From NCBI GenBank assembly GCA_002269645.1, contig NIVC01000687.1, positions 100,624 through 164,623 of the forward strand: a DNA stretch of 64,000 bases, in the 5' to 3' direction. A program made the translations under genes and the position numbers. The notes under the pieces are model-generated. The model ran no database searches. It saw only the letters and a list, made by a program, of their open reading frames with translations, and was not told the DNA's origin. Shown one piece after another: positions 17,850-55,661 of the stretch (its first letter is position 1; every line of letters starts with the position of its first letter). The DNA is from Macrostomum lignano. Lineage: Eukaryota.

Positions 17850-18085
17850 TAATCTGGGGGGGGGGGGTAAATAGTGCTAATCTGAGGAGCGTTGCTAATC
17901 TGAGCAGCGGTGCTAATCTTGGAAAAGTGTTGTTAAGGTGAGTGGTGCTGAGTTTGTTTTTGCAAAAATGAGAAAAAGTAATTTTTGATTAATGGGAATG
18001 GTAATTATGGTTACCATTGGACCAAAATAAAAACCACTTGGTGTCATTTCTCAGGCCCCTCAGCGGGGGGGGGGCTAATGGCTAG
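17850..18085 (+). mobile_element. 3' end of a Helitron-like element (hairpin + CTAG)
   Basis: GCCCCTCAGCGGGGGGGGGGC (18055-18075) then CTAG at 18082-18085. The upstream ~160 bp is homologous to 62995-63225. Confidence 0.55.
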
Positions 18086-18481
18086 TCCTTCTAAATATAC
18101 TAAATCTCTAATATTTGTTTGTTTGTATGCTTGTCCATAACGCTCTAGAGACTGCAATCTAAATATACTAAATCTCTAATCTTAATACTAAATCTTAATA
18201 CTAAAGTTGGTGCGATGTTTGTCTGTCTGTATGTTGCAATTTTTCTCCAAGACTACTTGCAACTCAGCGTTGAAACTTATATGGGTAAATCTTAATACTA
18301 AAGTTGGTGCGATGTTTGTCTGTCTGTATGTTGCAATTTTTCTCCAAGACTACTTGCAACTTCTTAATACTAAATCTAAATACTAAAGTTGGTGCGATGT
18401 TTGTCTGTCTGTATGTTGCAATTTTTCTCCTAGACTACTTGCAACTCATCTATCTATCTCGTCTATCTATCTATCTATCTA
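18086..18481 (+). mobile_element. Cluster of truncated Helitron 5' ends
   Basis: TC(T/A)TAATACTAAA or TCTAAATATACTAAA starts recur at ~18090, 18160, 18180, 18190, 18290, 18361 and 18372, followed by (TCTA)n. Confidence 0.75.
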
Positions 18482-21400
18482 TATATACTAAAGTTGACGC
18501 GTTGTTTGTCTGTCTGTATGTCAGTTCGATAACTCCTCCTAGAATACTTGCAACTCAGCGTTGAAACTTATATGGGAAAACTGCAAATTTTCCGAGGATG
18601 GCTTTAGGCTATTTTAATCTTTCATTTTCAATTTTTAAGATCCCTAAAAAAGCAGAAAACGGCGGTCTTGACCTTTGATAATCTTAATTGTCCCCTCTTT
18701 CTGCTCGGAGCTGAAAATTGGCATAAATTTTGAGTGATTACGCCACAACTTTTTCCTATGTCGCCAGTGCATTTTCTCTCCTGTGGGGGAATGGGCGCGT
18801 TCTCATTGGCGGCGTGTGTACAATTGGACCCTGGCTCACTGGCTGACTTTATAGATAATTGCGCAATGATATGGCTACTGATAAGTTTTCCTGCCTATCA
18901 ATGGGCAGTCCTGTGTATTTGTTGGACATTGAAATTCAATGCATCAACTTGCAAGCAGGCAGTGAACGTACACTCGATACTTCAATGCTATAAATCAGAC
19001 AGTTTCAAACGCTAACTGTTCCTCGAGTTTTAAACTTTGAGAGGAGAAACTTATATTGCTGGCAAGATCTTGCAACGCTGAGTTCGGGGATATAAGTTGT
19101 TTGCTTTAACTATGAAAAGAAAAAGCACAGCATTTGGAAAACTATTTCCATACTTTTAACTTTTTGCAAATATTGTACTCAGTTTTGCAAGACGTAATAG
19201 ATAAAGTTGGGGGGAGGGTTCAACTTCTCACTACAGCTGTGGATTGGAGGGTTGATTTAGATTGCGCAATCTTTTGTTAACTTTACCTGAGGCTGATACT
19301 GACTGACTGTGAAATCGGTTGCGCAATGAATTGATTCAATTAGTTCAATATTTTTATCTGTGCCTTTTAACACGAAGCTGTGCGTAGTTCTAACCCTAAC
19401 CCTAACCCTAACCCTAATGAATCTGGCGAGTTGAGTTGTTTGACGGAAAAAATTCGATTAAGTCAAGTTTAGCGGAGACGATTTCAATGTTTAAATTCTG
19501 ACGGAGAAGATTTCTGTTTCGTGGAGAGGATTTCGATGATGTTCAGTTTCACGAAAGGATTTCCATGGTGTTCAGTTTCACGGAGAGGATTTCGATCATG
19601 TTCAGCTTCACGGAGAGGCTTTCTGTTTCGCTGAGATAATTTATGATTGATTTCTGTTTTATGGAAACAATTTTGATGGATTCAGGTTTCAAGGAGAGGA
19701 TTTCGAAGGAGTCCAGTTTCACTGAGAGGATTTCGATGGTTTTTAGTTGCACAGACAGGATTTTTGCTTCGCGGAGAGGATTTTGATGGATTTGGCATCT
19801 TCAATCAGTCAGAGAAGAGAGTAAAGAGAAGACTGAAAAGAGAAGAGAGAAGAGATGATAGAAAACAGAGTAAAATTGAGTGGAGAGATTAGACATGACA
19901 GATTGGAGATGATAGGAGAGAGAATAGATGAGGGATAAGAGCGTACAGAGGCAATAGAAGAGAGGGGAGAGTAGAGGAGAAAGAAAGAGTGAGATGAGGA
20001 GATGAGGAGATGAGGGATGAGAGAGGAGGGGAGAGAGGAGACAGGAGAGAGTACAGACGAAAGACTAGGGAGAAGATATAAATAAGGTAGTAAAGATGAG
20101 AGGAGAGAGAGGAGAGAGAAGCGAAAGGAGAAGAGAGTGAGGAGAGAGGAGAGAGATGAAAGGAGCAAGGAAAGGAGAAAAGAGAGAATGGAGAGAATAG
20201 AAAAGAGAGAAGAGAAGAGACAGGGGATAGTGAAAAGGAGGAAGAAAGATGGGAGACAAGAAAGTAGTGTCAGAGCGTATATGAAATATGAGAAATGAGA
20301 GCAGAGAGAAGAGAAAAGAGAAGAGAGAGAGAGGGTTAAGAGAGACGATAGATAAGTGAGTAGAGATGACATATGAGAGAGGAGAGAAGAGGGAGAGATA
20401 AGAGTGAAGAGAGGAGACAGAAGACAGGAGAAGGTACAGACGAAAGACGAGGGAGAAGAGATAAATAAGGGAACAGGGGTAGAGATGAGATGAAAGAGAG
20501 GAGAGAGGAGATATGAGAGACTTGAGAGTCTTTGAGCTATGGTCTTTGAAAGATTTTGTAAAGAATTTGGAGACGATTTGGAAGATAGGGTTAAAGACAT
20601 GGAATTTCAGTTGATGGATATTTCAGGGAATAGAATTCCGGTGATGGGAGTTCTTCCCCTTTCTCCTCCGAAGGAGGAGTTCCACTCGTATATACTAAAG
20701 TTGACGCGTTGTTTGTCTGTCTGTATGTCAGTTCGATAACTCCTCCTAGAATACTTGCAACTCAGCGTTGAAACTTATATGGGAAAACTGCAAATTTTCC
20801 GAGGATGGCTTTAGGCTATTTTAATCTTTCATTTTCAATTTTTAAGATCCCTAAAAAAGCAGAAAACGGCGGTCTTGACCTTTGATAATCTTAATTGTCC
20901 CCTCTTTCTGCTCGGAGCTGAAAATTGGCATAAATTTTGAGTGATTACGCCACAACTTTTTCCTATGTCGCCAGTGCATTTTCTCTCCTGTGGGGGAATG
21001 GGCGCGTTCTCATTGGCGGCGTGTGTACAATTGGACCCTGGCTCACTGGCTGACTTTATAGATAATTGCGCAATGATATGGCTACTGATAAGTTTTCCTG
21101 CCTATCAATGGCAGTCCTGTGTATTTGTTGGACATTGAAATTCAATGCATCAACTTGCAAGCAGGCAGTGAACGTACACTCGATACTTCAATGCTATAAA
21201 TCAGACAGTTTCAAACGCTAACTGTTCCTCGAGTTTTAAACTTTGAGAGGAGAAACTTATATTGCTGGCAAGATCTTGCAACGCTGAGTTCGGGGATATA
21301 AGTTGTTTGCTTTAACTATGAAAAGAAAAAGCACAGCATTTGGAAAACTATTTCCATACTTTTAACTTTTTGCAAATATTGTACTCAGTTTTGCAAGACG

Positions 21401-24400
21401 TAATAGATAAAGTTGGGGGGAGGGTTCAACTTCTCACTACAGCTGTGGATTGGAGGGTTGATTTAGATTGCGCAATCTTTTGTTAACTTTACCTGAGGCT
21501 GATACTGACTGACTGTGAAATCGGTTGCGCAATGAATTGATTCAATTAGTTCAATATTTTTATCTGTGCCTTTTAACACGAAGCTGTGCGTAGTTCTAAC
21601 CCTAACCCTAACCCTAACCCTAATGAATCTGGCGAGTTGAGTTGTTTGACGGAAAAAATTCGATTAAGTCAAGTTTAGCGGAGACGATTTCAATGTTTAA
21701 ATTCTGACGGAGAAGATTTCTGTTTCGTGGAGAGGATTTCGATGATGTTCAGTTTCACGAAAGGATTTCCATGGTGTTCAGTTTCACGGAGAGGATTTCG
21801 ATCATGTTCAGCTTCACGGAGAGGCTTTCTGTTTCGCTGAGATAATTTATGATTGATTTCTGTTTTATGGAAACAATTTTGATGGATTCAGGTTTCAAGG
21901 AGAGGATTTCGAAGGAGTCCAGTTTCACTGAGAGGATTTCGATGGTTTTTAGTTGCACAGACAGGATTTTTGCTTCGCGGAGAGGATTTGATGGATTTGG
22001 CATCTTCAATCAGTCAGAGAAGAGAGTAAAGAGAAGACTGAAAAGAGAAGAGAGAAGAGATGATAGAAAACAGAGTAAAATTGAGTGGAGAGATTAGACA
22101 TGACAGATTGGAGATGATAGGAGAGAGAATAGATGAGGGATAAGAGCGTACAGAGGCAATAGAAGAGAGGGGAGAGTAGAGGAGAAAGAAAGAGTGAGAT
22201 GAGGAGATGAGGAGATGAGGGATGAGAGAGGAGGGGAGAGAGGAGACAGGAGAGAGTACAGACGAAAGACTAGGGAGAAGATATAAATAAGGTAGTAAAG
22301 ATGAGAGGAGAGAGAGGAGAGAGAAGCGAAAGGAGAAGAGAGTGAGGAGAGAGGAGAGAGATGAAAGGAGCAAGGAAAGGAGAAAAGAGAGAATGGAGAG
22401 AATAGAAAAGAGAGAAGAGAAGAGACAGGGGATAGTGAAAAGGAGGAAGAAAGATGGGAGACAAGAAAGTAGTGTCAGAGCGTATATGAAATATGAGAAA
22501 TGAGAGCAGAGAGAAGAGAAAAGAGAAGAGAGAGAGAGGGTTAAGAGAGACGATAGATAAGTGAGTAGAGATGACATATGAGAGAGGAGAGAAGAGGGAG
22601 AGATAAGAGTGAAGAGAGGAGACAGAAGACAGGAGAAGGTACAGACGAAAGACGAGGGAGAAGAGATAAATAAGGGAGCAGGGGTAGAGATGAGATGAAG
22701 AGAGGAGAGAGGAGATATGAGAGACTTGAGAGTCTTTGAGCTATGGTCTTTGAAAGATTTTGTAAAGAATTTGGAGACGATTTGGAAGATAGGGTTAAAG
22801 ACATGGAATTTCAGTTGATGGATATTTCAGGGAATAGAATTCCGGTGATGGGAGTTCTTCCCCTTTCTCCTCCGAAGGAGGAGTTCCACTCGTATATACT
22901 AAAGTTGACGCGTTGTTTGTCTGTCTGTCTGTCTGTGTGTCTGTCATTTCGACAACTCCTCCTTGAATAGTGCCAACTCAGCGTTGAAACTTATATGGGA
23001 AGATTGGAAATTATCCGAGGTCGGCTATAGGCTATTTTAATTCTGAAATTTTAATTTCTAAGATCCTCAAAAAAGCAGAAAACGGCGGTCTTGACCTTTG
23101 ATAATCTTAATTGTCCCCTCTTTCTGCTTGGAGCTGAAAATTTGCATGAATTTCAAGTGATTGCGCCACAACTTTTCCCTATCTCTGCAGTGTATTTTCT
23201 CTCCAGTGGGGGATGGGGCGTTCTAAATGGCTGCATGTGTACAATCGGACCCTGGCTCACCGGCTGACTTTATAGACAATTGCGCAAAGATTTGTGTTCT
23301 AATTTTCAATAGGCAGCCCTGTGTTTTGTTGAACCTTGAAATTCAATGCATAAACTTGCGGGCCTCTTTAGCAGGCAGTGAACGTACAATTGATATTTCA
23401 ATGCTTTAAATCAGAAAGTTTCAAACGCAAACTGTTGCTCGAGTTTTTAACTTTGAGAGAAAAAATTAATATTGCTGGAAAGAACTTGCAAAGCTGATTT
23501 CAGGGATATAAATTGTTTGCTTTAAATATGAAAAGAAAAAGCACAGCATTGAAAAAACTATTTCCATACTTTTAACTTTCTGCAAAAATTGTACTCAGTT
23601 TTGCGAGACGTAATAGATAAAGTTGGGGGAGAGTTCAACTTCTCACTGCTGCTGTGTATTGGAGGGTTGATTTAGATTGCGCAATGTTTTTGTTAACTTT
23701 AACTGAGACTGATACTGACTGACTGAGAAATCGGTTGCACAATCAATTGATTCAATTGGTTCAATTTTTTATTTGAACACGCAGCTGTGTGTAGCTCTAA
23801 CCCTAACCCTAACCCTAACAATAACCCTAACCAATGAATCCTGATATTTATTTTTTTGACGGAGAAAATTTCGATTGAGTCCAGTTTAAAAGAGAGAATT
23901 TCGATGGTTTTCAGTTTCACGGAAAGGATTTCGAAGGAGTCCAGTTTCACGGAGAGGATTTCGATGGTTTTCAGTTGCACGGACAGGATTTCTGCTTCGC
24001 GGAGAGGATCTTGATGGATTTGGCATCTTCAATCAGTCAGAGAAAAGAGTAAAGAGAAGAATGAAAGCAGAAGAGAGATGAGATGATAGAAAACAGAGTA
24101 GAAATAAGTGGAGATATTAGACATGACAGATTGGAGAGAAGAGGGGATTTAGGCGGGAACGAAGAGGGAGAGAGAAGAAAAGAGGAGAGAGGAGAGAAAA
24201 TAGATTAGGGATAAGAGCGTACAGAGAAAATAGAAGAGAGGGGAGAGTAGAGGAGAAAGAAAGAGTGAGATGAGGGGATGAGGGATGAGAGAGGAGGGGA
24301 GACAGGAGAGACAAGAAAGGAGAAAAGAGGGGAGAAAGGAGAAAGGAGAGAGTAGAGACGAAGGACCAGTTAGAAGATATAAATACGGCAGTAGAGATGA

Positions 24401-27400
24401 GAGAAGAGATAAGAGAGAGAAGCGAGAGAAGAAGCGAGAGGAGAAGAGAAAGAGGAGAGAGGAGAGAGATGAAATAGATAAGAGAGTTAAGAGAGGAAAG
24501 TAGTGAGGAGAGGAGAGATGAGAGATGCGATGATAAGAGATGAGTAACAACATAAGAGAGAAGAGAGAAGAGAGGGGAGAAGATAAAAGGAGCAAGGGGA
24601 GGAGAAAAGAGAGAATGGAGAGGATAGAAAAGAGAGAAGAGAAGAGACAGGGAAAAGTGGAAAGGAGGAAAGAAAGATTGAGACAAGTAAGTGGAGTGTG
24701 AGAGCGTATATGAGATATGAGAAATGAGAGCAGAGAGGAAAGAAAAGAGAAGAGAGAGAGGGTTAAGAGAGACAATAGATAAGTGAATAGGGATGACATA
24801 TAAAAGAGGAGAGAAGAGGGAGAGATAAGAGAGAAGAGAGAAGACAGGAGACAGAAGTGAAGAGGAGAGATATGAGAGAAGAGAGGAGACAAGAGACAGG
24901 AGAGGGTACAGACGAAAGACGAGGGAGAAAACATAAATAAGGGAGTACGGGTAGAGATGAGATGAGAGAGGAAGAGAGAAGAGAGTCACGATAATAGCAC
25001 AGAGTGGAGAGAGTAGATATGAGAGACGTGAGAGTCTTTGAGCTATGGTCTTTGAAAGGTTTTCTAAAGAATTTGGAGACGATTTGGAAGATAGGGTTCA
25101 AGACATGGAATTTCAGTTGATGGATATTTCAGGGAATGGAATTCCGGTGATGGGAGTTCTTCCCCTTTCTCCTCCGAAGGAGGAGTTCCACTTTCTCTAT
25201 CTTAATACTAAAACTGGTGCGTTGTTTGTCTGTGTGTGTGTGTGTTTGTTGGATATCTCCTCCTAGAATACTTGCAAGTCAGCGTTGAAACTTATGTGGG
25301 AAAACTGCAAATTTTCCGAGGATGGCTTTAGGCTATTTTAATCTTTTATTTTTACATTTTAAGATCCCTAAAAAAGCAGAAAACGGCAATTCTGACCTTT
25401 GATAATCTTAATTGTCCTCTCTTTCCGCTCGGAGCTGAAAATTTGCATGAATTTTGAGTGATTACGCAACAACTTTTTCCTATCTCGGCAGTGTATTTTC
25501 TCTCCAGTGGGGGGATGGGGGCGTTCTCAGTGGCGGCGTGTGTACACTTGGATCCTGGCTCACTGGCTGACTGTATAGATAATTGCGCAATGATTTGGCT
25601 ACTGATAAGTTTTCTTGCCTCTCAATGGGCAGCCCTGTGTATTTGTTGGACATTGAAATTCAATGCATCAGCTAGCAAGCAGGTAGTTAACGTACACTCG
25701 ATACTTCAATGCTATAAATCAGACAGTTTCAAACGCTAACTGCTCTTCGAGTTCTAAATGTTAAGAGAAGAGACTTATACTGCTGAATAGATCTTGCAAC
25801 ACTGAGTTCGAGGATATAAATTGTTTGCTTTAAATAGAAAAACTAAAAGCACAGCATCAAAAAAACTATTTCCAGACTTTTAGCTTTCTGCAAAGATTGT
25901 ACTCATTTTGGGGTTCAATGGGCGTTCGACCGACCCCCCAACAGTTGGGGGTTCAATTTCTAACTGCCACTGCGTAGTGGAAGGGGGTCGGGCGCTGTGT
26001 ACTGGAGGGTTGATTTAGATTGCGCAAACTTTTTGTTAACTTGAACTGAGACTGATACTGACTGACTGTGAAATCGGTTGCGCCATCAATTTGTTTTATT
26101 ATCTGTGCCTTTCAATAGGCTGCCCTGTGAAGTTTTGGACATTGAAATTCAATGCATAAACTTGCGAGCCTCTTTAGCAGGCAGTGAACGTACACTCGAT
26201 ATTTCAATGCTTTAAATCAGAAAGTTTCAAACGCAAACTGTTGCTCGAGTTTCTAACTTTGATAGGAGAAACTTATATTGCTGGAAAGATCTTGCAACGC
26301 TGAGTTCGGGGATATAATTTGTTATCTTTAAATATGAAAAGAAAAATCACAGCATTTAAAAAAACTATTTCCATGCTTTTAATTTTCTGCAAAAATTGTT
26401 CTCAGTTTTGCGAGACGTAATAGATAAAGTTGGGGGGGGAGGGTTCAACTTCTCACTGCTGCTGTGTATTGGAGGGTTGAATTAGATTGCGCAATGTTTT
26501 TGTTAACTTTAACTGAGACTGATACTGACTGACTGAGAAATCGGTTGCGCAATGAATTGATTCAATTAGTTCAATATTTTTATCAGTGCCTTTTAACACG
26601 AAGCTGTGCGTAGTTCTAACCCTAACCCTAACCCTAACCCTAACCAATGAATCTGGAGAGTTGAGTTGTTTGACGGAAAAAATCGATTGAGTCCAGTTTA
26701 GCGGAGACGATTTCAATGTTTTAATTTTGACGGAGAGGATTTCTGTTTGGTGGAGAGGATTTCTATTTCTCGGAGGGGATTTTGATGAATGTCAGTTTCA
26801 CGGAGAGGTGTTTGATGGAGTTCTCTTTTACGGAGAAGATTTCGATGATGTTCAGTTTCGCGGAGAGGAGTTGGATGATGGGATTCAGGGAATGGCATTT
26901 CAGGGAATGGAGTACCGGTGATGGGAATTCTTCCCCTTTCTCCTCCAGAGGAGGAGTTGGCCTCGTATATACTAAAGTTGACGTGTTGTTTGTCTGTCTG
27001 TCTGTCTGTCATTTCGACAACTCCTCCTTGAATAGTGCCAACTCAGCGTTGAAACTTATATGGGAAGATTGGAAATTATCCGAGGTCGGCTATAGGCTAT
27101 TTTAATTCTGAAATTTTAATTTCTAAGATCCTCAAAAAAGCAGAAAACGGCGGTCTTGACCTTTGATAATCTTAATTGTCCCCTCTTTCTGCTTGGAGCT
27201 GAAAATTTGCATGAATTTCAAGTGATTGCGCCACAACTTTTCCCTATCTCTGCAGTGTATTTTCTCTCCAGTGGGGGGATGGGGCGTTCTAAATGGCTGC
27301 ATGTGTACAATCGGACCCTGGCTCACTGGCTGACTTTATAGACAATTGCGCAAAGATTTGTGTTCTAATTTTCAATAGGCAGCCCTGTGTTTTGTTGAAC

Positions 27401-30400
27401 CTTGAAATTCAATGCATAAACTTGCGGGCCTCTTTAGCAGGCAGTGAACGTACAATTGATATTTCAATGCTTTAAATCAGAAAGTTTCAAACGCAAACTG
27501 TTGCTCGAGTTTTTAACTTCGAGAGAAAAAATTAATATTGCTAGAAAGAACTTGCAAAGCTGATTTCAGGGATATAAATTGTTTGCTTTAAATATGAAAA
27601 GAAAAAGCACAGCATTGAAAAAACTATTTCCATACTTTTAACTTTCTGCAAAAATTGTACTCAGTTTTGCGAGACGTAATAGATAAAGTTGGGGGGAGAG
27701 TTCAAATTCTCACTGCTGCTGTGTATTGGAGGGTTGATTTAGATTGCGCAATGTTTTTGTTAACTTTAACTGAGACTGATACTGACTGACTGAGAAATCG
27801 GTTGCGCAATCAATTGATTCAATTGGTTCAATTTTTTATTTGAACACGCAGCTGTGTGTAGCTTTAACCCTAACCCTAACCCTAACAATAACCCTAACCA
27901 ATGAATCCTGATATTTATTTTTCTGACGGAGAAAATTTCGATTGAGTCCAGTTTAAAAGAGAGAATTTCGATGGTTTTCAGTTTCACGGAAAGGATTTCG
28001 AAGGAGTCCAGTTTCACGGAGAGGATTTCGATGGTTTTCAGTTGCACGGACAGGATTTCTGCTTCGCGGAGAGGATCTTGATGGATTTGGCATCTTCAAT
28101 CAGTCAGAGAAAAGAGTAAAGAGAAGAATGAAAGCAGAAGAGAGATGAGATGATAGAAAACAGAGTAGAAATAAGTGGAGATATTAGACATGACAGATTG
28201 GAGAGAAGAGGGGATTTAGGCGGGAACGAAGAGGGAGAGAGAAGAAAAGAGGAGAGAGGAGAGAAAATAGATTAGGGATAAGAGCGTACAGAGAAAATAG
28301 AAGAGAGGGGAGAGTAGATAGCGGAATGGGCGCCCGCGCCTTCCCGCTGTGTCCCCTCCGGGACAGCCCTGCAGCTAAGGGGAGAGTAGAGGAGAAAGAA
28401 AGAGTGAGATGAGGGGATGAGGGATGAGAGAGGAGAGGAGACAGGAGAGACAAGAAAGGAGAAAAGAGGGGAGAAAGGAGAAAGGAGAGAGTAGAGACGA
28501 AGGACCAGTTAGAAGATATAAATACGGTAGTAGAGATGAGAGGAGAGATAGGAGAGAGAAGCGAGAGAAGAAGCGAGAGGAGAAGAGAAAGAGGAGAGAG
28601 GAGAGAGATGAAATAGATAAGAGAGTTAAGAGAGGAAAGTAGTGAGGAGAGGAGAGATGAGAGATGCGATGATAAGAGATGAGTGAGAACATAAGAGAGA
28701 AGAGAGAAGAGATTAGAGAAGAGAGGGGAGAAGATAAAAGGAGCAAGGGGAGGAGAAAAGAGAGAATGGAGAGGATAGAAAAGAGAGAAGAGAAGAGACA
28801 GGGAAAAGTGGAAAGGAGGAAAGAAAGATTGGAGACAAGTAAGTGGAGTGTGAGAGCGTATATGAGATATGAGAAATGAGAGCAGAGAGGAAAGAAAAGA
28901 GAAGAGAGAGAGGGTTAAGAGAGACGATAGATAAGTGAATAGGGATGACATATAAAAGAGGAGAGAAGAGGGAGAGATAAGAGAGAAGAGAGAAGACAGG
29001 AGACAGAAGTGAAGAGGAGAGATATGAGAGAAGAGAGGAGACAAGAGACAGGAGAGGGTACAGACGAAAGACGAGGGAGAAAACATAAATAAGGGAGTAC
29101 GGGTAGAGATGAGATGAGAGAGAGGAGAGAGAAGAGAGTCACGATAATAGCACAGAGTGGAGAGAGTAGATATGAGAGACGTGAGAGTCTTTGAGCTATG
29201 GTCTTTGAAAGGTTTTGTAAAGAATTTGGAGACGATTTGGAAGATAGGGTTCAAGACATGGAATTTCAGTTGATGGATATTTCAGGGAATGGAATTCCGG
29301 TGATGGGAGTTCTTCCCCTTTCTCCTCCGAAGGAGGAGTTCCACTTTAATACTAAAAGTGGTGCGTTGTTTGTCTGTATGTATGTCAGTTCGATAACTCC
29401 TCCTAGAATACTTGCAACTCAGCGTTGAAACTTATATGGGAAAACTGCAAATTTTCCGAGGATGGCTTTAGGCTATTTTAATCTTTCATTTTCAATTTTT
29501 AAGATCCCTAAAAAAGCAGAAAATGGCGGTCTTGACCTTTAATAATCTTAATTGTCCCCTCTTTCTGCTTGGAGCTGAAAATTTGCATCAATTTTAGTGA
29601 TTGCGCCATAAAATTTTTCTATCTTGGCAGTGTATTTTCTCTCAAGTGGGGGGATGGTCGCGTTCTCAGTGGCTGCGTGTGTACACTTGAACCCTGGCTC
29701 ACTGACTGACTTTATAGACAATTGCGCAACTATTTGTGTTCTGTTTTTTAACAGGAAGCCCTGTGTATTTTTTGCACAGTGAAATTCAGTGCATTTTAAT
29801 GCATAAACTTGCGAGCATCTTTAGCAGGCAGTGAACGTACACTCGATATTTCAATGCTTAAAATCAGAAAGTTTCAAACACTAACTGTTGCTCGAGTTTT
29901 GAACTTAGAGAGGAGAGACTTATATTGCTGGAAAGATCTTGCTGCAATGAGTTCGGGGATATAAGTTTTTTGCTTTAAATATGAAAATTAAATTCACAGC
30001 ATTCAAGAAAAGATTTTCATACTTTTAGCTTTCTGCAAAGATTGTGCTCATTTTGGAGTTCAATGGGGGTTCGACCGACCCCCAATAGTTGGTGGGGGGG
30101 AGTTCAATTTCTAGCTGCACTGCGTATTGGAAGGGGGTCGGTTGCTGTGTATTTGAGGGTTGATTTAGATTGCGCAATCTTTTTGTTAACTTTAACTGAG
30201 GCTGATACTGACTGCCTGAGAAATAAGTTGCGCAATTTAATTGGTTCAATGTTTTTACGGCGCCTTTCAACACGCAGCTGTCAACCCTAACCCTAACCCT
30301 AACCAATGAATTCTGAGAGCTGGGCTATTTGACGTAGAAATTTCGATTTAGTCCAGTTTCACGGAGAGGATTTCTATTTCGCGGAGAATATTTCGATGGT

Positions 30401-39366: not shown

Positions 39367-40107
39367 TCTCTCTTAATACTAAAACTGGTGCGATTATTGT
39401 GTGTGTGTTGCGATTTTTCTCCTAGACAACTGGCAAGTCAGCGTCGAAACTTATATGGGAAAACAGAAAATTTTCCGGATCAGGCTTTAGGCTATTTTAA
39501 TTTTTAATTTTCACATTTTAACATCCCTAAAAAAGCAGAAAACTGCTTTTAACCTTCTTTGGCCCTTCTGTCTTTCCAGTAAGAGAGTTGGCAGTCTGTT
39601 TGTAAAAATAGCCACCCCAACCTCCGCCCGCGGGTCGCTGTGTATTGAGGGTTGGTGGGTGCGCGTGTTCTGCGTTCAATGCAAATAACCCCCCCCCCCC
39701 GCGTTTTGGGGGTTCAGTGAAATTCTATGCTTCGGGGGGGGGGGGGGGGGTTGGGCTTTGGCTGAGTACATACCACTGTACAGTGTAAACAGAGGCTACG
39801 ATTTGGTTTTATTATCGGCGCCTTTAGTCAGTCAGTCCCTTTAACTGGGAAATGGACAGACTGGTGGGGCCTAAAGTTCTGTTTATTGATTTTTTCACTG
39901 GGCCTTTACTTACTTAATGAGGCGAATTTTCAATTTTCAATTCAATTTTCCATATCATAATAGATTTCTCTCATTCTCTCCAATCTGCCGTTTTTGCTAT
40001 TTACCTATCAAAATACACTAAATTTTTTTTCATTTTTACTCATTTTTGCCTGTTTTTGCTTATTTTAGCCTATTTTAGCCTATTTTTGCTTATTTTTTTC
40101 ATCCAAA

Positions 40108-45728: not shown

Positions 45729-45769
45729 TTAGACTCAATTGAATTAACAGACTCAAATGACAGAAATAT

Positions 45770-46350
45770 AATATGAGTGACATATTATAAGAGTGAGTGA
45801 TAAATTATGAGAGTGAGAGAAAAATTATGAGAGTGAGAGACAAATTATGAGAGTAAGTGACAAATTATGAGAATAAATGACAAATTATGAGAGTAAGTGA
45901 AAAATTATGAGAGTGAGTGACAAATTATGAGAGTGAGTGACAAATTATGAGAATAAATGACAAATTATGAGAGTAAGTGAAAAATTATGAGAGTGAGTGA
46001 CAAATTATGAGAGTGAGTGACAAATTATGAGAGTAAGTGACAAATTATGAGAGTGAGTGACAAATTATGAGAGTGAGTGACAAATTATGGGAGCGAGTGG
46101 GTGAAAAATTATGAGAAGGAGTGGTTAATCATGAGAGGGAGTGAAAAATTATGAGTGACAAATTTGAGAGCGATAATACTTATGAGGGTGCAAAATTCAG
46201 GATGTCATATTGAGTGTGACGAATTATGAGAGTGATAAATTATGAGAGACAAATTATGAGTCATAAATTTTGAGAGTGACGAATTCACGAGCGAAAATAC
46301 TTATGCCACATTGAGTGCCAAATTGAGAGTGCGACAAATAATGAGACTGA
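45770..46350. repeat. 20 bp minisatellite (GAGAGTGAGTGACAAATTAT) directly after the RepHel stop
   Basis: About 17 regular units followed by degenerate copies. Confidence 0.92.
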
Positions 46351-47227
46351 TAAATCTTTTAACATAAACTATTAGGTAGTGGCAAAACTGTTTCTTGATA
46401 GAGTTGCTCATATAAGGGGAGCTTCTAAGAATGCTCAGGCTCCAAGCAATTTAGATTCAATTGCCGTACTTATTTTTTCTGAATCTTTTTAATGTACAAA
46501 GTAGCCGTTCGTAATTATTTATGTATTTTGTTACACGTGTAATATTAACGGCCAATTCACACATTTAGTATTGTCAGTTAAGTTATTAGGTTTCTTCCAC
46601 TTTCTCCCCACCTTTGCTTGCACCCCTATTATAACACAATTTATTGCTGGAAAGAGCTTTAATAAAAAATATATGCCATACTGTACTCGGGGTGCGCAGG
46701 ATTCAGAATACAAACGAGCCAGTCGATTCATAGGCTATTAGTAAACATCATAAATAATGAAAAGGTATTACATGCACATAAATTCTGAATTAACAATTAT
46801 GCAATACTTAGCCAATGACCCGTGCTTATACTATCCCTTTAATTTGGTCGTTTCCTGCGCACCCCCCAATGATGTCTTTGAATTAGTTTTTTTAATATAT
46901 TTAACGGAGACACAGAAGTATAACTACCTGATAGGAATGGATGCGTTAGTTAGATTTCTAATTGCGCGTTGTGTACTGAAAGTGTAGGTCGCTGTGTACG
47001 TATTGGAGGGTTGATTTGGATTGCGTAACCTTATAGTTAATTTATAATGAGCCTAACACCGACTGCCTGATAAATTGATTACGTCATAAATGCTTTGTGT
47101 GACTCTTACTCTGACTGACTTAGCTCATGAGATTCAGCTGATGGATTTCAGGGAATGGAATTCCGGTTATGGGATTCCGGTGATGGGAGTTCTTCCCCTT
47201 TCTCCTCCGGAGGAGGAGTTGGCCTCG

Positions 47228-50200
47228 TCTTAATACTAAAAGTGATGCGTTGTTTGTTTGTCTGTATGTGTGTTGCAATTTTTCTCCTAAACTACTGGCA
47301 AGTCAGCGTTGAAACTTATATGGGTAAACTGCAAATTTTCCGGACTGGGTTTATAGCAATTTTAATCTTTCATTTTTACATTTTAAGATCCCTAAAAAAG
47401 CAGAAAACTGATTTCCTAACCTTCTTTGGCCCTTCTGTGGCCACTCTGCCTCTCCAGTGGATTCGTTGCAGTCTGTTTGTAAAAATAGCCACCCCAACCT
47501 CCGCCCGCGGGTCGCTGTGTTTTGGGGGGTGGGTGCGCGTGTTCCGCGTTCAATGCAAATACCCCCCCCCGCGTGTTGGGGGGTTCAATTAAATTTAATG
47601 ATTCCCCGGAACGGGGGGTAGGGCTTGGGCTGAGTGTACATAGCAGTTGTACAGTGTAAACAGATAGACTGTGTCGAGATTCAATAGGTTTTATTATTGG
47701 CGCCTTTTTTTCTCCATAGGCAGCCCTGTGTATTAGCTTGGCAGTGAAATTCTTGCGAGCTTATCTAGCAAGCAGTCGGGAAATCAGTAAATTTCAAACG
47801 CTAACTGTACCTCGAGTTTTAAACTTTGAGAGGAGAGACTTATATTGCTGGAAAGATCTTTTAATGCTGAGTTCAGGGATGTAAGTTGTTTGCTTTAAAT
47901 ATGGAAACAGAAAGCTTAGAATTACGAAAATGGTTTCCATGCTTTTAAGGTCCTGCAAAGATTGTACTTAGTTTTGCGAGACATAATAGACAAAGTTAGG
48001 GGGAGGGTTCAAATTCTTACTATCGCTGTGTATTGGAGGGTTGATTTAGATTGCGCTATCTTTTTGTTAACTTCAACTTCAACTGATAATGACTGACTGT
48101 GAAATCGGTTGCACAATCAATTGATGCAATTTATTCAATATTTTTATCGGTGCCTTTTAACTTGCAGCTGAGCGTAGTTCTAACCCTAACCCTAACCCTA
48201 ACCCTAACCAATGAATCCGGAGAGTTGAGTTGTTGGACGGAGAAAATTCGATTGAGTCCAGTTTAAACGGAGACGATTCCGATGTTTTCATTTTTACGGA
48301 GAGAATTTCTGTTTCGTGGAGAGGATTTCGATGATGTTCAGCTTCACGGAGAGGATTTCAGTTTCACGGAGAAAATTTCGATTGAGTCCAGTTTCGCGGA
48401 GAGGATCTTGATGGATTTGGAGAAAAGTTGGATGATGGGATTCGGGTCTTGGGATTCAGCTGATGGAGTTCAGGGAATGGAATTCCGGTAATGGGAGTTC
48501 TTCCCCTTTCTCCTCCAGAGGAGGAGTTGGCCTCGTTAATACTAAAAGTGATGCGTTGTTTGTTTGTCTGTATGTGTGTTGCAATTTTTCTCCTAAACTA
48601 CTGGCAAGTCAGCGTTGAAACTTATATGGGTAAACTGCAAATTTTCCGGACTGGGTTTATAGCAATTTTAATCTTTCATTTTTACATTTTAAGATCCCTA
48701 AAAAAGCAGAAAACTGATTTCTCAACCTTCTTTGGCCCTTCTGTGGCCACTCTGCCTCTCCAGTGGAGGGGTTGCAGTCTGTTTGTAAAAATAGTCACCC
48801 CAACCTCCGCCCGCGGGTCGCTGTGTTTTGGGGGGGGGGTGGGTGCGCGTGTTCTGCGTTAAATGCAAAACCCCCGCGTGTTGGGGGGTTCAATTAAATT
48901 TAACGATTCCCCCGGAATGGGGGGTTGGGCTTGGGCTGAGTGTACATAGCAGTTGTACAGTGTTAGGAGATAGCTAGGACTGTGTCGAGATTTAATTGGT
49001 TTTATTATCGGCGCCATTCAATAGGCAGCCATGTGTATTTGCTGGGCAGTGAAATTCAATGAATAAACTTGCGAGCCTCTTTAGCAGGCAGTGAACATAC
49101 ACTCGATACTTCAATGCTTTAAATCGGGAAATTTCAAACGCTAACTATTCCTTGAGTTTTAAACTTTCAGAGAGACTTATATTGCTGGAAAGATCTTGCA
49201 ATACTGAGTTCGGGGATTTAAGTTGTTTGCTTTAAATATGAAAACAAAAAAGCACAGCATTTAAAAAACAATTTCCATACTTTTAACTTTCTGCAGAGTG
49301 TACTCATTTTGGGTTCAAAGGGGGTTCGACCAACCCCCCAACAGTTGGAGGGGAGTTCAACTTTTAATTGCCACTGCGTATTGGAAGGGGGTCAGTCGCT
49401 GTGTATTGGAGGGTTGATTTAGTTTGCGCAATCTTTTTGTTAACTTTAACTGAGACTGATACTGACTGACTGTTAAATCGGTTGCGCAATGAATTGATTC
49501 AATTAGTTCAATTTTTTATCGACGCCTTTCAACACACTGCTGCGTGTAGCTCTAACCCTAACCCTAACCCTAACCCTAACCACTGAATCCTGAGAGTTGA
49601 TTCTTTTTGACGGAGAAAATTTCGATTCAGTCCAGTTTTATGGAGAGAATTTCTGTTTTGCGGAGACGATTTTAATGGATGTCAGCTTCACGGAGAGGTG
49701 TTTGATGGAGTTCTCTTTTACGGAGAGGATTTCGATGATGTTCAATTTCGCGGAGAGGAGTTGGATGATGGGTTTCATGGAATGGCATTTCAGGGAATGG
49801 AGTTCCGGTGATGGGAATTCTTCCCCTTTCTCCTCCAGAGGAGGAGTTGGCCTCGTCTAAATACTAAAGTTGGTGCGATGTTTGTCTGTCTGTATGTTGC
49901 AATTTTTCTCCTAGACTACTTGCAACTCAGCGTTGAAACTTATATGGGTAAACTGCAAATTTTCCGGGTTGGGTTTATAGCTATTTTAATCTTTCATTTT
50001 TATATTTTAAGATCCCTAAAAAAGCAGAAATAATAAAACAATAGGGAATATGATCCACCTTGCGCAACTCTTAGTGATTGCGCCACAACAGCTGGCCTAT
50101 CTGTGTAGTGTATTCTTTTAGCTGAAGGGGTGTAACTGGGCCAGTTGGCATCAATTTTTAGTGATTACGCCACAACTTTCTCCTATCTCGGCAGTGTATT

Positions 50201-53200
50201 TTCTCTCCAATGGGGGAATGGGGGCATTCTCAGTGGCTGCGTGTGTACAATCGGACCCTAGCTCACTGGCTGATTGTATAGACAATTGCGCAACGATATG
50301 TTTTCTGATTTTCAATAGGCAGCCCTGTGTATTTGTTGGACAGTAAAATTCAATGAATAAACTTGCGAGCCTCCCACTGCTGCAGGCAGTGAACGTACAC
50401 TTAATAGTTCAATTCCTTAAAACGGGAAATTTCAAAGCCAAACTGTTCCTTGAGTTTTAAACTTTAAGAGAAGAGACTTATATTGCTGGAAAGAGGTTGC
50501 AATGCTGAGTTAGGGGATATAAGTTTTTTGCTCTAAATGTGAAAATTAAAAGCACAGCATTCAAAAAGTGATTTCCATACTTTTAACTTTTTGCAAAGAT
50601 TGTACTCCATTTCGGGGGTTCAATGAGGGTTTGACAGACTCCCAACAGTGGGGGGGTTCAATTTCTAGCTGCACTGCGTATTCGAAGGGGTTCAGTCGCT
50701 GTGTATTGGAGGGTTGATTTAGATTGCGCAATTTTTTTGTTAACTTTAACCGAGGCTGATACTGACTGCCTGAGAAATAAGTTGCGCAATTTAATTGGTT
50801 CAATGTTTTAACGGCGCCTTTCAACATGCAGCTGTGTAGCTCTAACCCTAACCCTAACCATAACCAATGAATTCTGAGAGCTGGGTTCTGTTTGACAGAG
50901 AAATTTCGATTGAGTCCAGTTACACGGAGAGGATTTTCGCGGAGAGGATTTTGATGGTGTTCAGTTTCACGGAGACAATTTCTGTTTCGCGGAGAGTTCA
51001 GGAAATGGGATTCCGGTGATGGGAGTTCTTCCCCTTTCTCCTCCAGCGGAGGAGTTGGCCTCGTCTTAATACTAAAAGTGGTGCGTTGTTTGTTTGTCTG
51101 TATGTGTGTTGCAATTTTTCTCCTAGACTACTGACAAGTCAGCGTTGAAACTTATATGGGAAAACTGCAAATTTTCCGGATTGGGTTTATAGCTATTTTA
51201 ATCTTCCATTTTAATATTTTAAGATCCCTAAAAAAGCAGAAAACTGATTTCCTAACCTTCTTTGGCCCTTCTGTGGCCACTCTGCCTCTCCAGTGGAGGG
51301 GTTGCAGTCTGTTTGTAAAAATAGCCACCCCAACCTCCGCCCGCGGGTCGCTGTGTTTTGGGGGGGGGGGTGCGCGTGTTCCGCGTTCAATGCAAAACCC
51401 CCCCGCGTGTTGGGGGGTTCAATTAAATTTAACGATTCCCCGGAATGGGGGTTTGGGCTTGGGCTGAGTGTACGTAGCAGTTGTACAGTGTAAGCAGATA
51501 GATAGGACTGCCGAGATTCAATTGGTTTTATTATTGGCGCCTTTTTTCTCCATAGGCAGCCCTGTGCATTAGCTTGGCAGTGAAATTCTTGCGAGCTTAT
51601 CTAGCAAGCAGTCGGGAAATCAGTAAATTTCAAACGCTAACTGTACCTCGAGTTTTAAACTTTGAGAGGAGAGACTTATATTGCTGGAAAGATCTTTTAA
51701 TGCTGAGTTCAGGGATGTAAGTTGTTTGCTTTAAATATGGAAACAGAAAGCTTAGAATTACGAAAATGGTTTCCATACTTTTAAGGTCCTGCAAAGATTG
51801 TACTTAGTTTTGCGAGACATAATAGACAAAGTTAGGGGGAGGGTTCAAATTCTTACTATCGCTGTGTATTGGAGGGTTGATTTAGATTGCGCTATCTTTT
51901 TGTTAACTTCAACTTCAACTGATACTGACTGACTGTGAAATCGGTTGCACAATCAATTGATGCAATTTATTCAATATTTTTATCGGTGCCTTTTAACTTG
52001 CAGCTGAGCGTAGTTCTAACCCTAACCCTAGCCCTAACCCTAACCCTAACCCTAACCCTAACCCTAACCAATGAATCTGGAGAGTTGAGTTGTTGGACGG
52101 AGAAAATTCGATGGAGTCCAGTTTAAACGGAGACGATTCCGATGTTTTCATTTTTACGGAGAGGATTTCTGTTTCGTGGAGAGGATTTCGATGATGTTCA
52201 GCTTCACGGAGAGGATTTTGATGATGTTCAGCTTCACGGAGAGGATTTTAGTTTCACGAAGAAAATTTCGATTGAGTCCAGTTTCTGGAGAAACTTTAGA
52301 TTTGGAGAAAAGTTGGATGATGGGATTCGGGTCTTGGGATTCAGCTGATGGAGTTCAGGGAATGGATTCCGGTGATGGGAGTTCTTCCCCTTTCTCCTCC
52401 AGAGGAGGAGTTGGCCTCGTCTAAATACTAAAGTTGGTGCGATGTTTGTCTGTCTGTATGTTGCAATTTTTCTCCTAGACTACTTGCAACTCAGCGTTGA
52501 AACTTATATGGGTAAACTGCAAATTTTCCGGGTTGGGTTTATAGCTATTTTAATCTTTCATTTTTATATTTTAAGATCCCTAAAAAAGCAGAAATAATAA
52601 AACAATAGGGAATATGATCCACCTTGCGCAACTCTTAGTGATTGCGCCACAACAGCTGGCCTATCTGTGTAGTGTATTCTTTTAGCTGAAGGGGTGTAAC
52701 TGGGCCAGTTGGCATCAATTTTTAGTGATTACGCCACAACTTTCTCCTATCTCGGCAGTGTATTTTCTCTCCAATGGGGGAATGGGGGCATTCTCAGTGG
52801 CTGCGTGTGTACAATCGGACCCTAGCTCACTGGCTGATTGTATAGACAATTGCGCAACGATATGTTTTCTGATTTTCAATAGGCAGCCCTGTGTATTTGT
52901 TGGACAGTAAAATTCAATGAATAAACTTGCGAGCCTCCCACTGCTGCAGGCAGTGAACGTACACTTAATAGTTCAATTCCTTAAAACGGGAAATTTCAAA
53001 GCCAAACTGTTCCTTGAGTTTTAAACTTTAAGAGAAGAGACTTATATTGCTGGAAAGAGGTTGCAATGCTGAGTTAGGGGATATAAGTTTTTTGCTCTAA
53101 ATGTGAAAATTAAAAGCACAGCATTCAAAAAGTGATTTCCATACTTTTACCTTTTTGCAAAGATTGTACTCCATTTCGGGGGTTCAATGAGGGTTTGACA

Positions 53201-54982
53201 GACTCCCAACAGTGGGGGGTTCAATTTCTAGCTGCACTGCGTATTCGAAGGGGTTCAGTCGCTGTGTATTGGAGGGTTGATTTAGATTGCGCAATTTTTT
53301 TGTTAACTTTTACCGAGGCTGATACTGACTGCCTGAGAAATAAGTTGCGCAATTTAATTGGTTCAATGTTTTAACGGCGCCTTTCAACATGCAGCTGTGT
53401 AGCTCTAACCCTAACCCTAACCATAACCAATGAATTCTGAGAGCTGGGTTCTGTTTGACAGAGAAATTTCGATTGAGTCCAGTTACACGGAGAGGATTTT
53501 CGCGGAGAGGATTTTGATGGTGTTCAGTTTCACGGAGACAATTTCTGTTTCGCGGAGAGTTCAGGAAATGGGATTCCGGTGATGGGAGTTCTTCCCCTTT
53601 CTCCTCCAGCGGAGGAGTTGGCCTCGTCTTAATACTAAAAGTGGTGCGTTGTTTGTTTGTCTGTATGTGTGTTGCAATTTTTCTCCTAGACTACTGACAA
53701 GTCAGCGTTGAAACTTATATGGGAAAACTGCAAATTTTCCGGATTGGGTTTATAGCTATTTTAATCTTTCATTTTAATATTTTAAGATCCCTAAAAAAGC
53801 AGAAAACTGATTTCCTAACCTTCTTTGGCCCTTCTGTGGCCACTCTGCCTCTCCAGTGGAGGGGTTGCAGTCTGTTTGTAAAAATAGCCACCCCAACCTC
53901 CGCCCGCGGGTCGCTGTGTTTTGGGGGGGGGGGTGCGCGTGTTCCGCGTTCAATGCAAAACCCCCCCGCGTGTTGGGGGGTTCAATTAAATTTAACGATT
54001 CCCCGGAATGGGGGTTTGGGCTTGGGCTGAGTGTACGTAGCAGTTGTACAGTGTAAGCAGATAGATAGGACTGCCGAGATTCAATTGGTTTTATTATTGG
54101 CGCCTTTTTTCTCCATAGGCAGCCCTGTGCATTAGCTTGGCAGTGAAATTCTTGCGAGCTTATCTAGCAAGCAGTCGGGAAATCAGTAAATTTCAAACGC
54201 TAACTGTACCTCGAGTTTTAAACTTTGAGAGGAGAGACTTATATTGCTGGAAAGATCTTTTAATGCTGAGTTCAGGGATGTAAGTTGTTTGCTTTAAATA
54301 TGGAAACAGAAAGCTTAGAATTACGAAAATGGTTTCCATACTTTTAAGGTCCTGCAAAGATTGTACTTAGTTTTGCGAGACATAATAGACAAAGTTAGGG
54401 GGAGGGTTCAAATTCTTACTATCGCTGTGTATTGGAGGGTTGATTTAGATTGCGCTATCTTTTTGTTAACTTCAACTTCAACTGATACTGACTGACTGTG
54501 AAATCGGTTGCACAATCAATTGATGCAATTTATTCAATATTTTTATCGGTGCCTTTTAACTTGCAGCTGAGCGTAGTTCTAACCCTAACCCTAGCCCTAA
54601 CCCTAACCCTAACCCTAACCCTAACCCTAACCAATGAATCTGGAGAGTTGAGTTGTTGGACGGAGAAAATTCGATGGAGTCCAGTTTAAACGGAGACGAT
54701 TCCGATGTTTTCATTTTTACGGAGAGGATTTCTGTTTCGTGGAGAGGATTTCGATGATGTTCAGCTTCACGGAGAGGATTTTGATGATGTTCAGCTTCAC
54801 GGAGAGGATTTTAGTTTCACGAAGAAAATTTCGATTGAGTCCAGTTTCTGGAGAAACTTTAGATTTGGAGAAAAGTTGGATGATGGGATTCGGGTCTTGG
54901 GATTCAGCTGATGGAGTTCAGGGAATGGATTCCGGTGATGGGAGTTCTTCCCCTTTCTCCTCCAGAGGAGGAGTTGGCCTCG
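47228..54982 (+). mobile_element. Tandem array of 6 non-autonomous Helitron units (1.2-1.36 kb)
   Basis: Unit ends (CTCG) at 48535, 49855, 51063, 52419, 53626 and 54982. The last four form a near-identical dimer repeat of ~2563 bp. Confidence 0.9.
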
Positions 54983-55520: not shown

Positions 55521-55526
55521 TCGATG

Positions 55527-55590: not shown

Positions 55591-55661
55591 GTTTAAAAGT
55601 AGTAGTGTAAAATTTTTTATTAAAAGCTTTTATTAAAGGACTAAATAAAAACACTTAGATT

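What the first reader, a model, noticed from the sequence alone, without database searches (positions are those of the whole stretch)
18482..54982. 36.5 kb seamless head-to-tail Helitron concatemer: 17 non-autonomous units plus one RepHel-coding element
Seen: 18 same-orientation units abut with no host DNA between them. The junction is usually hairpin-TT(GG/CC)(C/A)CTCG|T(C)...ATACTAAA, at ~20688, 22892, 25193, 26965, 29345, 30563, 31886, 33180, 34375, 36581, 39366, 47227, 48535, 49855, 51063, 52419, 53626 and 54982. Established: Helitrons normally insert singly between A and T, and rolling-circle read-through of the terminator gives 3'-to-5' junctions and tandem copies. Inference: the neighbouring units are divergent subtypes rather than clones, so one run-on event cannot explain the array. 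It looks like a persistent Helitron-built locus that carries its own transposase and grows by repeated end-joined additions and recombination.
Basis: partly seen in the sequence, partly recalled or inferred. Interest (0 to 1): 0.9.

Follow-up and report, generated by a model that had tools for sequence, protein, structure and literature searches.

The report
Mixed head-to-tail Helitron array in flatworm
A 36.5 kb stretch of a Macrostomum (flatworm) genome really is 18 rolling-circle transposons (Helitrons) joined end to start with no other DNA between them, an unusually large and mixed example of a phenomenon already described in bats, maize and other genomes.

Summary
18 same-strand units (18483-54982) each end in a 7-bp GC hairpin plus TTGGCCTCG/TTCCACTCG. 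A T-initial leader and the 5' motif ATACTAAA follow within 1-12 nt (18 junction matches against 0.01 expected by chance). Unit 12 encodes a Helraiser-like RepHel with HUH, YxxxY and Walker A motifs, short introns and one frameshift in a G-run. The other 17 units share only its termini. The closest protein relatives (92% identity) are from Macrostomum lignano. A second locus of an M. lignano assembly has the same seamless junctions. That locus also has one 3' end that abuts unrelated DNA, and another locus has a solitary 5' end, so the termini are real element ends.

One run-on event cannot explain the array, because it holds at least five subtypes that are 70-89% alike and mosaic. U1=U2=U10 are 99.6-99.8% identical, U3~U5 are 99%, and [U15U16]=[U17U18] differ at 4 positions in 2563 bp.

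The best reading is serial RepHel-made end-to-end joins plus recent local duplication and recombination. Perfect head-to-tail Helitron junctions, including between different Helitrons, are already published (Myotis; maize, PMC2267711). This is therefore a large new member of a known kind.

The parts
18086..18461 (+). Ladder of about 8 truncated Helitron 5' ends (13-101 nt). Each restarts at TCT(T/A)AATA(T)ACTAAA. Three rungs are 97-100% identical to the first 72-97 nt of U15/U17. Six of seven rungs end in A before the next TC.
18045..18085 (+). 3' end of a different Helitron family: G/C hairpin, then GCTAATGGCTAG, a canonical CTAG terminus. It abuts the first 5' fragment directly (CTAG|TC).
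18483..22892 (+). U1 and U2, adjacent near-clones of 2.2 kb (type A). Together with U10 they differ at 9 positions in 2207.
22893..29345 (+). U3 (2301 bp), U4 (1772 bp) and U5 (2380 bp). U3 and U5 are 99% identical. U4, of another subtype, sits seamlessly between them.
29346..34375 (+). U6, U7, U8 and U9 (1.2-1.3 kb). U6 and U9 are 95% identical. U7 and U8 are other subtypes.
34376..36581 (+). U10, a 99.6% copy of U1/U2. It lies between unrelated neighbours, U9 and U11.
36582..39366 (+). U11, 2785 bp, a non-autonomous unit with a purine-rich GA block.
39367..47227 (+). U12, the RepHel-coding Helitron (7861 bp). Its 5' 175-460 bp, an internal ~100-140-bp block and its 3' ~90 bp are shared with the non-autonomous units.
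40108..45728 (+). RepHel gene. It has an N-terminal STPR-like ORF (40108-40446) and Rep and PIF1 coding blocks at about 40992-41495, 41698-42334, 42443-43971, 44052-44357, 44483-44865 and 44955-45728. A GC-AG intron lies at 42335-42442. Motifs present: HUH (LPHVHALLWL), YxxxY (KYVVKY), Walker A (DAPGGTGKT). There is a -1 frameshift in the G-run at 44672-44675.
47228..49855 (+). U13 and U14 (type D, 1.3 kb). Their first 180 bp are 100% identical, but they are only 88% identical overall.
49856..54982 (+). [U15 U16][U17 U18], a two-unit tandem duplication of 2563/2564 bp with 3 substitutions and 1 indel. Its limits coincide with unit junctions, to within 30 nt on the left and 3 nt on the right.
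54983..62021 (+). Element of a related family that starts directly after U18's CTCG with TCCATATACTAAAAATGG. Its interior is full of 48-bp and 23-bp minisatellites. No 3' end was identified.
62022..64000 (+). A further Helitron-type 5' end (TTTTCTAATATACTAAAAG...) that runs off the window.

Best explanation
This is a nest of canonical-type (Helraiser-like, Helitron1-like) rolling-circle transposons in a Macrostomum lignano-like genome. It holds 17 non-autonomous elements of at least five mosaic subtypes and one RepHel-coding element. All lie on one strand and are joined 3' terminus (hairpin + TTGGCCTCG) to 5' terminus (T/TC leader + ATACTAAA).

Shown: the ends are true element ends; the units are separate family members, not one diverged concatemer; part of the array is very recent local duplication.

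Inferred mechanism:
1. RepHel-made joins create the precise 3'-5' junctions. A new copy may be integrated exactly at the 5' boundary of a resident element. That boundary is by construction a host-A|TC site and also carries the sequence RepHel recognises and nicks. Alternatively, dimers or multimers made by terminator read-through or from circles may be integrated.
2. Any left end to any downstream right end can then be co-mobilised.
3. Unequal crossing-over or gene conversion between the conserved termini and shared modules duplicates and reshuffles units.

The RepHel copy is simply one member of the nest. It need not be the nest's engine.
For: Ends are real:
- In a second M. lignano locus (L001), four junctions are seamless. 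A fifth 3' end (...GGAGGAGTTGGCCTCG) runs straight into unrelated DNA beginning with T.
- In L002, a RepHel copy sits alone in an innexin intron. Its ATACTAAA 5' end is preceded by non-Helitron DNA.

Autonomous and non-autonomous units are related through shared termini only.

The units are heterogeneous: 70-89% identity between most neighbours and lengths of 1.2-2.8 kb.

Young copies sit among old ones. U10 is 99.6% identical to U1/U2 but has different neighbours. U4 lies exactly between the 99%-identical U3 and U5.

Local duplication is evident. [U15U16]=[U17U18] differ at 4 positions, and the duplicate's limits fall at unit junctions.

The units are mosaic. The 5' and 3' trees disagree, and diverged units share 100%-identical blocks.

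The left-edge ladder of truncated 5' ends mostly shows A|TC joins.

There is precedent. Two different maize Helitrons are joined CTAG|TC, and PCR showed they arrived by consecutive insertions (PMC2267711). Tandem arrays and head-to-tail junctions are reported in bats and plants.
Against: - No empty site or orthologous locus was available, so no single insertion event is demonstrated and the order of events is unknown.
- The 3' terminus is CTCG, not the canonical CTRR.
- Seven of the 18 units start with TA or TT rather than TC.
- The A|T target rule could not be tested. Only one 3' flank (T) was seen.
- The limits of the two-unit duplicate fit homologous crossing-over in the 38-nt identical 3' termini just as well as transposition of a dimer.
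- Only three loci of this family could be examined, so a preference for end-to-end insertion is not quantified.
- The RepHel frame is interrupted once.
Confidence: 0.7

Rival explanations
1. The array is one rolling-circle run-on or multimer integration of a single element, followed by divergence in place.
For: Same orientation and seamless junctions throughout. U1/U2 form an adjacent clone pair. This is the published explanation for homogeneous tandem Helitron arrays.
Against: Unit lengths range from 1.2 to 7.9 kb, with subtype-specific interiors. Neighbours are 70-89% identical, yet identical twins lie non-adjacent (U10 with U1/U2, U3 with U5, U13 with U16). Subtype-like copies occur at other loci: L001 is 98% identical to U2, and L002 is 89% identical to the U18 5' region.
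Confidence: 0.04
2. The array is a satellite-like amplification. A small ancestral cluster of two or three abutting Helitrons expanded and was reshuffled purely by unequal crossing-over and gene conversion, with no end-targeted integration.
For: A two-unit duplicate has 4 differences, and its limits fall in the conserved 38-nt termini. Diverged units share 100%-identical modules, and the 5' and 3' trees are discordant.
Against: There is no higher-order periodicity. The order of types is irregular (A A A' B A' C C' D C A A'' Auto D D C'' D C'' D). At least five subtypes plus an autonomous copy must still have been brought together end to end. The second array in L001 has a different unit order.
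Confidence: 0.15
3. The array is an assembly artefact. Long-read assembly of dispersed Helitron copies produced false joins or false extra copies.
For: Near-identical units (99.6-99.9%) and the G-run frameshift are typical trouble spots for long-read assemblies.
Against: Most junctions join clearly different units, so they are anchored by unique sequence. The same junction type recurs in another contig of the public M. lignano assembly GCA_002269645.1. False joins would not fall exactly at termini 18 times.
Confidence: 0.06
4. The locus has a host-level role, for example as a uni-strand small-RNA (piRNA-type) source or transposon trap. It would be kept because all units face the same way.
For: Only the strict single orientation over more than 36 kb, and probably more than 46 kb. 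There is no direct evidence.
Against: No expression or small-RNA data could be consulted. Single orientation follows automatically from end-to-end joining.
Confidence: 0.05

Closest known systems
Head-to-tail adjacent Helitrons in maize (r1 region of B73; Du et al. 2008, PMC2267711)
   Same: Two different Helitrons lie in the same orientation. The 3' terminus of one is joined directly to the TC of the next, giving a G/T junction with no host A. This was interpreted and PCR-supported as consecutive insertions rather than tandem repeats.
   Different: The maize case has two elements and CTAG ends. Here there are 18 or more elements, CTCG ends, an autonomous copy inside the array, interleaved near-identical clones, and a ladder of truncated 5' ends at one edge.
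Tandem Helitron arrays / perfect head-to-tail junctions in Myotis lucifugus, Bombyx mori and Arabidopsis
   Same: Seamless 3'-5' junctions are attributed to bypass of the termination signal during rolling-circle transposition. The U1-U2 pair fits this directly.
   Different: As cited, those arrays are repeats of one element. This array is a mixture of subtypes.
Helraiser / HelibatN (canonical Helitron1) transposition system
   Same: The RepHel matches Helraiser (7LCC, 1.3e-63). A 3' subterminal hairpin lies 9 nt from the end. There are no terminal inverted repeats. Helraiser circles carry a precise 3'-5' end junction.
   Different: The terminus here is CTCG rather than CTAG. The 5' leader is variable and microsatellite-like. 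The gene contains short introns.
Helitron-derived satellites and subtelomeric Helitron expansions (DINE-TR1 in Drosophila; Hydractinia/Nematostella; Paramecium chromosome ends)
   Same: Helitron sequences are amplified locally, carry internal minisatellites and are sometimes associated with telomeric regions. Units here also carry 30-bp minisatellites, and one subtype carries (CTAACC)5-9.
   Different: In those cases internal repeats or fragments are amplified. Here complete elements with both termini are the repeating units, and there is no evidence that the locus is subtelomeric.

Membership tests
Canonical Helitron (Helitron1 type) | RepHel protein: HUH Rep domain with two catalytic tyrosines, fused to a PIF1-type helicase | tested here: met
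   Helitron_like_N 5e-52, PIF1, Pif1_2B. LPHVHALLWL, KYVVKY and DAPGGTGKT are present. Helraiser 7LCC matches at 1.3e-63. One frameshift lies at 44672-44675.
Canonical Helitron (Helitron1 type) | GC-rich hairpin about 10 nt upstream of the 3' end | tested here: met
   A 7-bp stem with a 3-nt loop, 9 nt from the end, in all 18 units and 5 L001 units.
Canonical Helitron (Helitron1 type) | 3' terminus CTRR | tested here: not met
   The terminus is CTCG in 14 of 18 units and in L001, where it abuts foreign DNA. This is a variant of the consensus. A neighbouring family does end in CTAG.
Canonical Helitron (Helitron1 type) | 5' terminus TC | tested here: inconclusive
   11 of 18 units begin TC after CTCG, 7 begin TA or TT, and all begin with T. 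The leader behaves as a (TCTA)n/(TC)n microsatellite.
Canonical Helitron (Helitron1 type) | Insertion between host A and T without target-site duplication | not testable with these tools
   No empty sites were available. One 3' flank is T (L001). The 5' flank in L002 is ambiguous. Six of seven ladder joins are A|TC.
Canonical Helitron (Helitron1 type) | No terminal inverted repeats | tested here: met
   No terminal or subterminal inverted repeat links the two ends of U13.
Helentron / Helitron2 | Subterminal inverted repeats, T|T target with T-runs at the boundaries, and (for Helentron) an endonuclease domain | tested here: not met
   No subTIRs. No endonuclease domain among the ORFs. The best structural relative is Helraiser. 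The features are as described in PMC4067079.
Tandem / head-to-tail Helitron arrays | 3' terminus of one element joined directly to the 5' terminus of the next, same orientation, no intervening host A | tested here: met
   18 junctions in the window and 4 in L001.
Tandem / head-to-tail Helitron arrays | Units are copies of one element (product of terminator bypass) | tested here: not met
   This holds only for U1-U2 and the duplicated pair U15-U18. The other neighbours are 70-89% identical.

The most novel reading that the evidence does not exclude
This family's RepHel preferentially uses the boundary of a resident element as its integration site. That boundary is a host-A|TC left end that RepHel recognises and nicks anyway. 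One-directional Helitron islands would therefore grow mainly at their 5' edge. The ladder of truncated 5' ends at 18086-18461, mostly joined A|TC, would be the footprint of abortive or prematurely terminated integrations at that growing edge. If so, this would be natural evidence for self-targeted, site-specific Helitron integration.
Probability: 0.25. Interest if true: 0.65.

Novelty: new member of a known kind. Interest (0 to 1): 0.4.

Why it matters
Helitron transposition has been reconstituted only with Helraiser. How tandem and abutting copies arise in genomes is still argued from a handful of junctions. An array with 18 or more precise junctions offers much more material. It has interleaved near-identical and old units, a coding copy, and a pile of truncated left ends at one edge. 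That makes it a rich natural substrate for separating three processes: terminator read-through, end-targeted integration and homologous recombination. Macrostomum lignano is also a laboratory model in which transgenesis and long-read sequencing are possible. For genome annotation, the practical point is that such nests will be mis-called as satellites or as single giant elements.

Tried and rejected
1. More loci of the family were sought.
- A second protein search with the helicase C-terminus gave only Logan contigs of other organisms or families (L003-L009) and a different M. lignano Helitron family (L010). None carried the end motifs.
- A third protein search used the 145-aa ORF that spans the U12/U13 junction, hoping to pull annotated junction-spanning products. 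It found nothing.

2. No canonical 3' end was found for the solitary copy in L002.

3. 3' ends of the elements right of 54983 were sought with the neighbouring family's CTAG-end motif. Only the 18071-18085 site was found.

4. The first BLAST-based identity matrix understated the identity of clones, because internal repeats diluted the averages. It was replaced by global alignments.

5. A Helentron/Helitron2 assignment was rejected.

6. A telomere-linked role was considered because of the (CTAACC)n and (TTAGGG)n tracts. The tracts are internal, conserved parts of one subtype. Nothing shows a chromosome end.
Full report
**Observation**

The window is eukaryotic, repeat-rich DNA. From 18483 to 54982, 18 units lie on the + strand. 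Each ends with the hairpin CTCCTCC-NNN-GGAGGAG followed by TTGGCCTCG or TTCCACTCG. The next unit then begins with a short T-initial leader and ATACTAAA(A/G)(G/C/T)TG(G/A)(T/C)GCG. The combined pattern GGAGTT-N5-25-ATACTAAA occurs 18 times, always on the + strand, against 0.01 expected in dinucleotide shuffles. The hairpin folds as single-stranded DNA at -8.9 kcal/mol. GC and AT skew are strongly one-sided across the block, as expected for a single orientation.

**What the units are**

- Unit 12 (39367-47227, GC 0.5-0.59) carries Helitron_like_N (5e-52), PIF1 and Pif1_2B domains. It matches the solved Helraiser transposase 7LCC at 1.3e-63.
- Read against homologues, the gene is spread over several blocks separated by short introns. 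One is a GC-AG intron at 42335-42442 that splits YQKRG|LPHVHALLWL.
- The HUH motif, the two-tyrosine motif KYVVKY and the Walker A motif DAPGGTGKT are present.
- There is one break that no intron can explain. Inside the conserved PFGGALLVLAGDFRQ motif the frame shifts by one base in the G-run at 44672-44675. This is either a real mutation or a homopolymer error.
- The 17 other units (1.2-2.8 kb) have no such coding capacity. They share with unit 12 only the first 175-460 bp, a ~100-140-bp internal block and the last ~90 bp. This is the classic autonomous/non-autonomous relationship.
- There are no terminal or subterminal inverted repeats.
- The closest proteins, up to 92% identical, are from Macrostomum lignano.

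**Are the junctions two real ends, or the conserved middle of a satellite monomer?**

Two other loci of the public M. lignano assembly GCA_002269645.1 answer this.

- L001 holds a second array with four seamless junctions of the same kind. It also holds an internally deleted RepHel copy whose ...GGAGGAGTTGGCCTCG end runs directly into unrelated DNA beginning with T.
- L002 holds a RepHel copy alone in an innexin intron. Its ATACTAAA 5' end is preceded by a CT-rich microsatellite and intron DNA, not by a Helitron 3' end.

The two motifs are therefore genuine termini that can occur apart.

The leader between CTCG and ATACTAAA behaves as a microsatellite belonging to the 5' end. For one subtype it is (TCTA)n with n = 0, 2 or 5.

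**Composition of the array**

Global alignments give a different picture from 'divergent subtypes rather than clones'.

| Units | Identity |
|---|---|
| U1, U2, U10 | 99.6-99.8% (9 differing positions in 2207) |
| U3, U5 | 99% |
| U13, U16, U18 | 97% (U16 = U18) |
| U15, U17 | about 100% |
| U6, U9 | 95% |
| all other pairs | 70-89% |

- [U15 U16] and [U17 U18] form a 2563/2564-bp tandem duplicate with three substitutions and one indel. Its limits fall at the unit junctions, within 30 nt on the left and 3 nt on the right.
- The order of types is irregular, with no higher-order period.
- Near-identical copies sit among unrelated neighbours. U10 lies between U9 and U11. U4 lies exactly between the twins U3 and U5.
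- The units are also mosaics. Trees of the first 170 bp and the last 110 bp disagree, and diverged units share blocks of 100% identity. Examples are the first 180 bp of U13 and U14, the first 240 bp of U1 and U6, and the last 180 bp of U1 and U3.

**Edges**

The block is not bounded where the finding says.

- To the left, 18086-18461 is a ladder of about eight 5'-terminal fragments of 13-101 nt. Each restarts at TCT(T/A)AATA(T)ACTAAA.
- Three rungs are 97-100% identical to the start of U15/U17.
- Six of seven rungs end in A before the next TC.
- The ladder itself abuts a canonical hairpin-CTAG 3' end of another Helitron family at 18085.
- To the right, U18's CTCG is followed at once by another family's 5' end (TCCATATACTAAAAATGG). 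A further 5' motif lies at about 62022. Their 3' ends could not be found.

**Mechanism**

A single read-through concatemer is excluded by the heterogeneity and by the presence of related subtypes at other loci. Pure unequal crossing-over explains the two-unit duplicate and the mosaicism. It does not explain how five or more subtypes and a coding copy came to be joined exactly end to end, nor the irregular order.

The most economical account combines two processes.

1. RepHel-made joins create the precise junctions.
   - Integration of a copy at the 5' boundary of a resident element gives a seamless CTCG|TC junction without violating the A|T rule. That boundary is by construction host-A|TC.
   - Once formed, any left end to any downstream right end can move together.
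   - Read-through or multimer integration gives clone pairs such as U1-U2.
2. Homologous exchange between conserved termini and modules adds recent duplicates.

All of this is inference. No empty site or polymorphism was available. The ladder of truncated left ends fits repeated transposase activity at the array's 5' edge, but slippage of the 13-nt leader motif cannot be excluded.

**Comparison with what is known**

- Perfect head-to-tail Helitron junctions and tandem arrays were reported in Myotis lucifugus and Bombyx mori and ascribed to bypass of the terminator. Distantly related Helitrons directly next to one another were noted in bat and maize (PMC4067079; PMC5876387). Arabidopsis arrays are cited in PMC11934779.
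- Du et al. 2008 (PMC2267711) described two different maize Helitrons joined CTAG|TC. They discussed exactly the G/T versus A/T junction argument, and showed by PCR across inbred lines that the two arrived by consecutive insertions.
- Helraiser circles carry the same precise end junction.

The kind is therefore known. What is new here is the host (a flatworm), the scale (18 or more units, over 36 kb), the mixture of very young and old units, the CTCG terminus, and the ladder at the edge.

**Limits**

Attempts to sample more loci of the family failed. The genome-wide frequency of end-to-end joins, the target-site rule, and the correctness of the assembly at the near-identical copies all remain untested.

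**Verdict**

This is a large, well-preserved new member of a known kind. Interest is moderate (0.4). It would be higher if a census showed that this family targets its own ends.

Noticed in passing
window 48181-48210, 52016-52069, 54579-54632; also 59343-59400: Telomere-type hexamers sit inside the elements. (CTAACC)5 in U13 and (CTAACC)9 in U16/U18 lie at the same internal position, so the tract is an integral, length-variable part of that subtype. A (TTAGGG)9.7 tract in the opposite orientation lies in the element to the right of the array.
   Followed up: partly
window 18086-18461: A ladder of about eight truncated Helitron 5' ends (13-101 nt) lies in tandem. Six of seven are joined A|TC to the next rung. 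They could be footprints of abortive or prematurely terminated integrations, or of slippage.
   Followed up: partly
window 18045-18085: The canonical hairpin + CTAG 3' end of a different Helitron family (the one with GTGCTAATCTG repeats) directly abuts the ladder. Head-to-tail joining therefore crosses family boundaries.
   Followed up: partly
window 54983-64000: At least two more elements have the ATACTAAA-type 5' motif, at 54983 and about 62022. Long minisatellites fill them: 48-bp at 55658-56795, 23-bp at 57208-58495 and 63811-64000, and about 20-bp GTGCTAATCTGGGG at 61508-63055. Their 3' ends were not identified.
   Followed up: partly
window 40108-40446 (+); L010 113-2729: The N-terminal ORF of the RepHel element matches the STPR DNA-binding repeat family (PF21107, 2.8e-07). 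A RepHel of another M. lignano Helitron family carries the same weak hit. STPR-like N-termini may be a feature of flatworm Helitron transposases.
   Followed up: no
window 44672-44675: A single-base deficit in a G-run breaks the RepHel frame inside the conserved PFGGALLVLAGDFRQ helicase motif. It may be a sequencing error or a real inactivating mutation.
   Followed up: partly
window, near the 3' end of every non-autonomous unit (e.g. 19509-19793, 31523-31792, 38063-38286, 52097-52281): A 30-bp minisatellite (TTTCACGGAGAGGATTTCGATGATGTTCAG and variants) occurs in all units with variable copy number. Purine-rich GA blocks in U3, U5 and U11 (24813-24899, 28532-29051, 38587-39075) drive the extreme GC and AT skew.
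   Followed up: no
window 45774-46155: A 20-bp tandem repeat (about 19 copies) lies downstream of the RepHel stop codon inside U12.
   Followed up: no
window 1293-1694 (-), 14700-15809 (-): Possible host gene fragments lie left of the array. One ORF contains a WD40 repeat (1.8e-07). A 369-aa ORF has weak PAN_3 and Laminin_G_3 hits. Minisatellites lie at 836-1275, 1755-1993 and 16646-17339.
   Followed up: no
L001 11391-12134: In the second M. lignano array, the DNA just beyond the last Helitron 3' end carries a minus-strand ORF with a weak DNA_pol_B_2 hit. It is possibly a Maverick/Polinton-type element.
   Followed up: no
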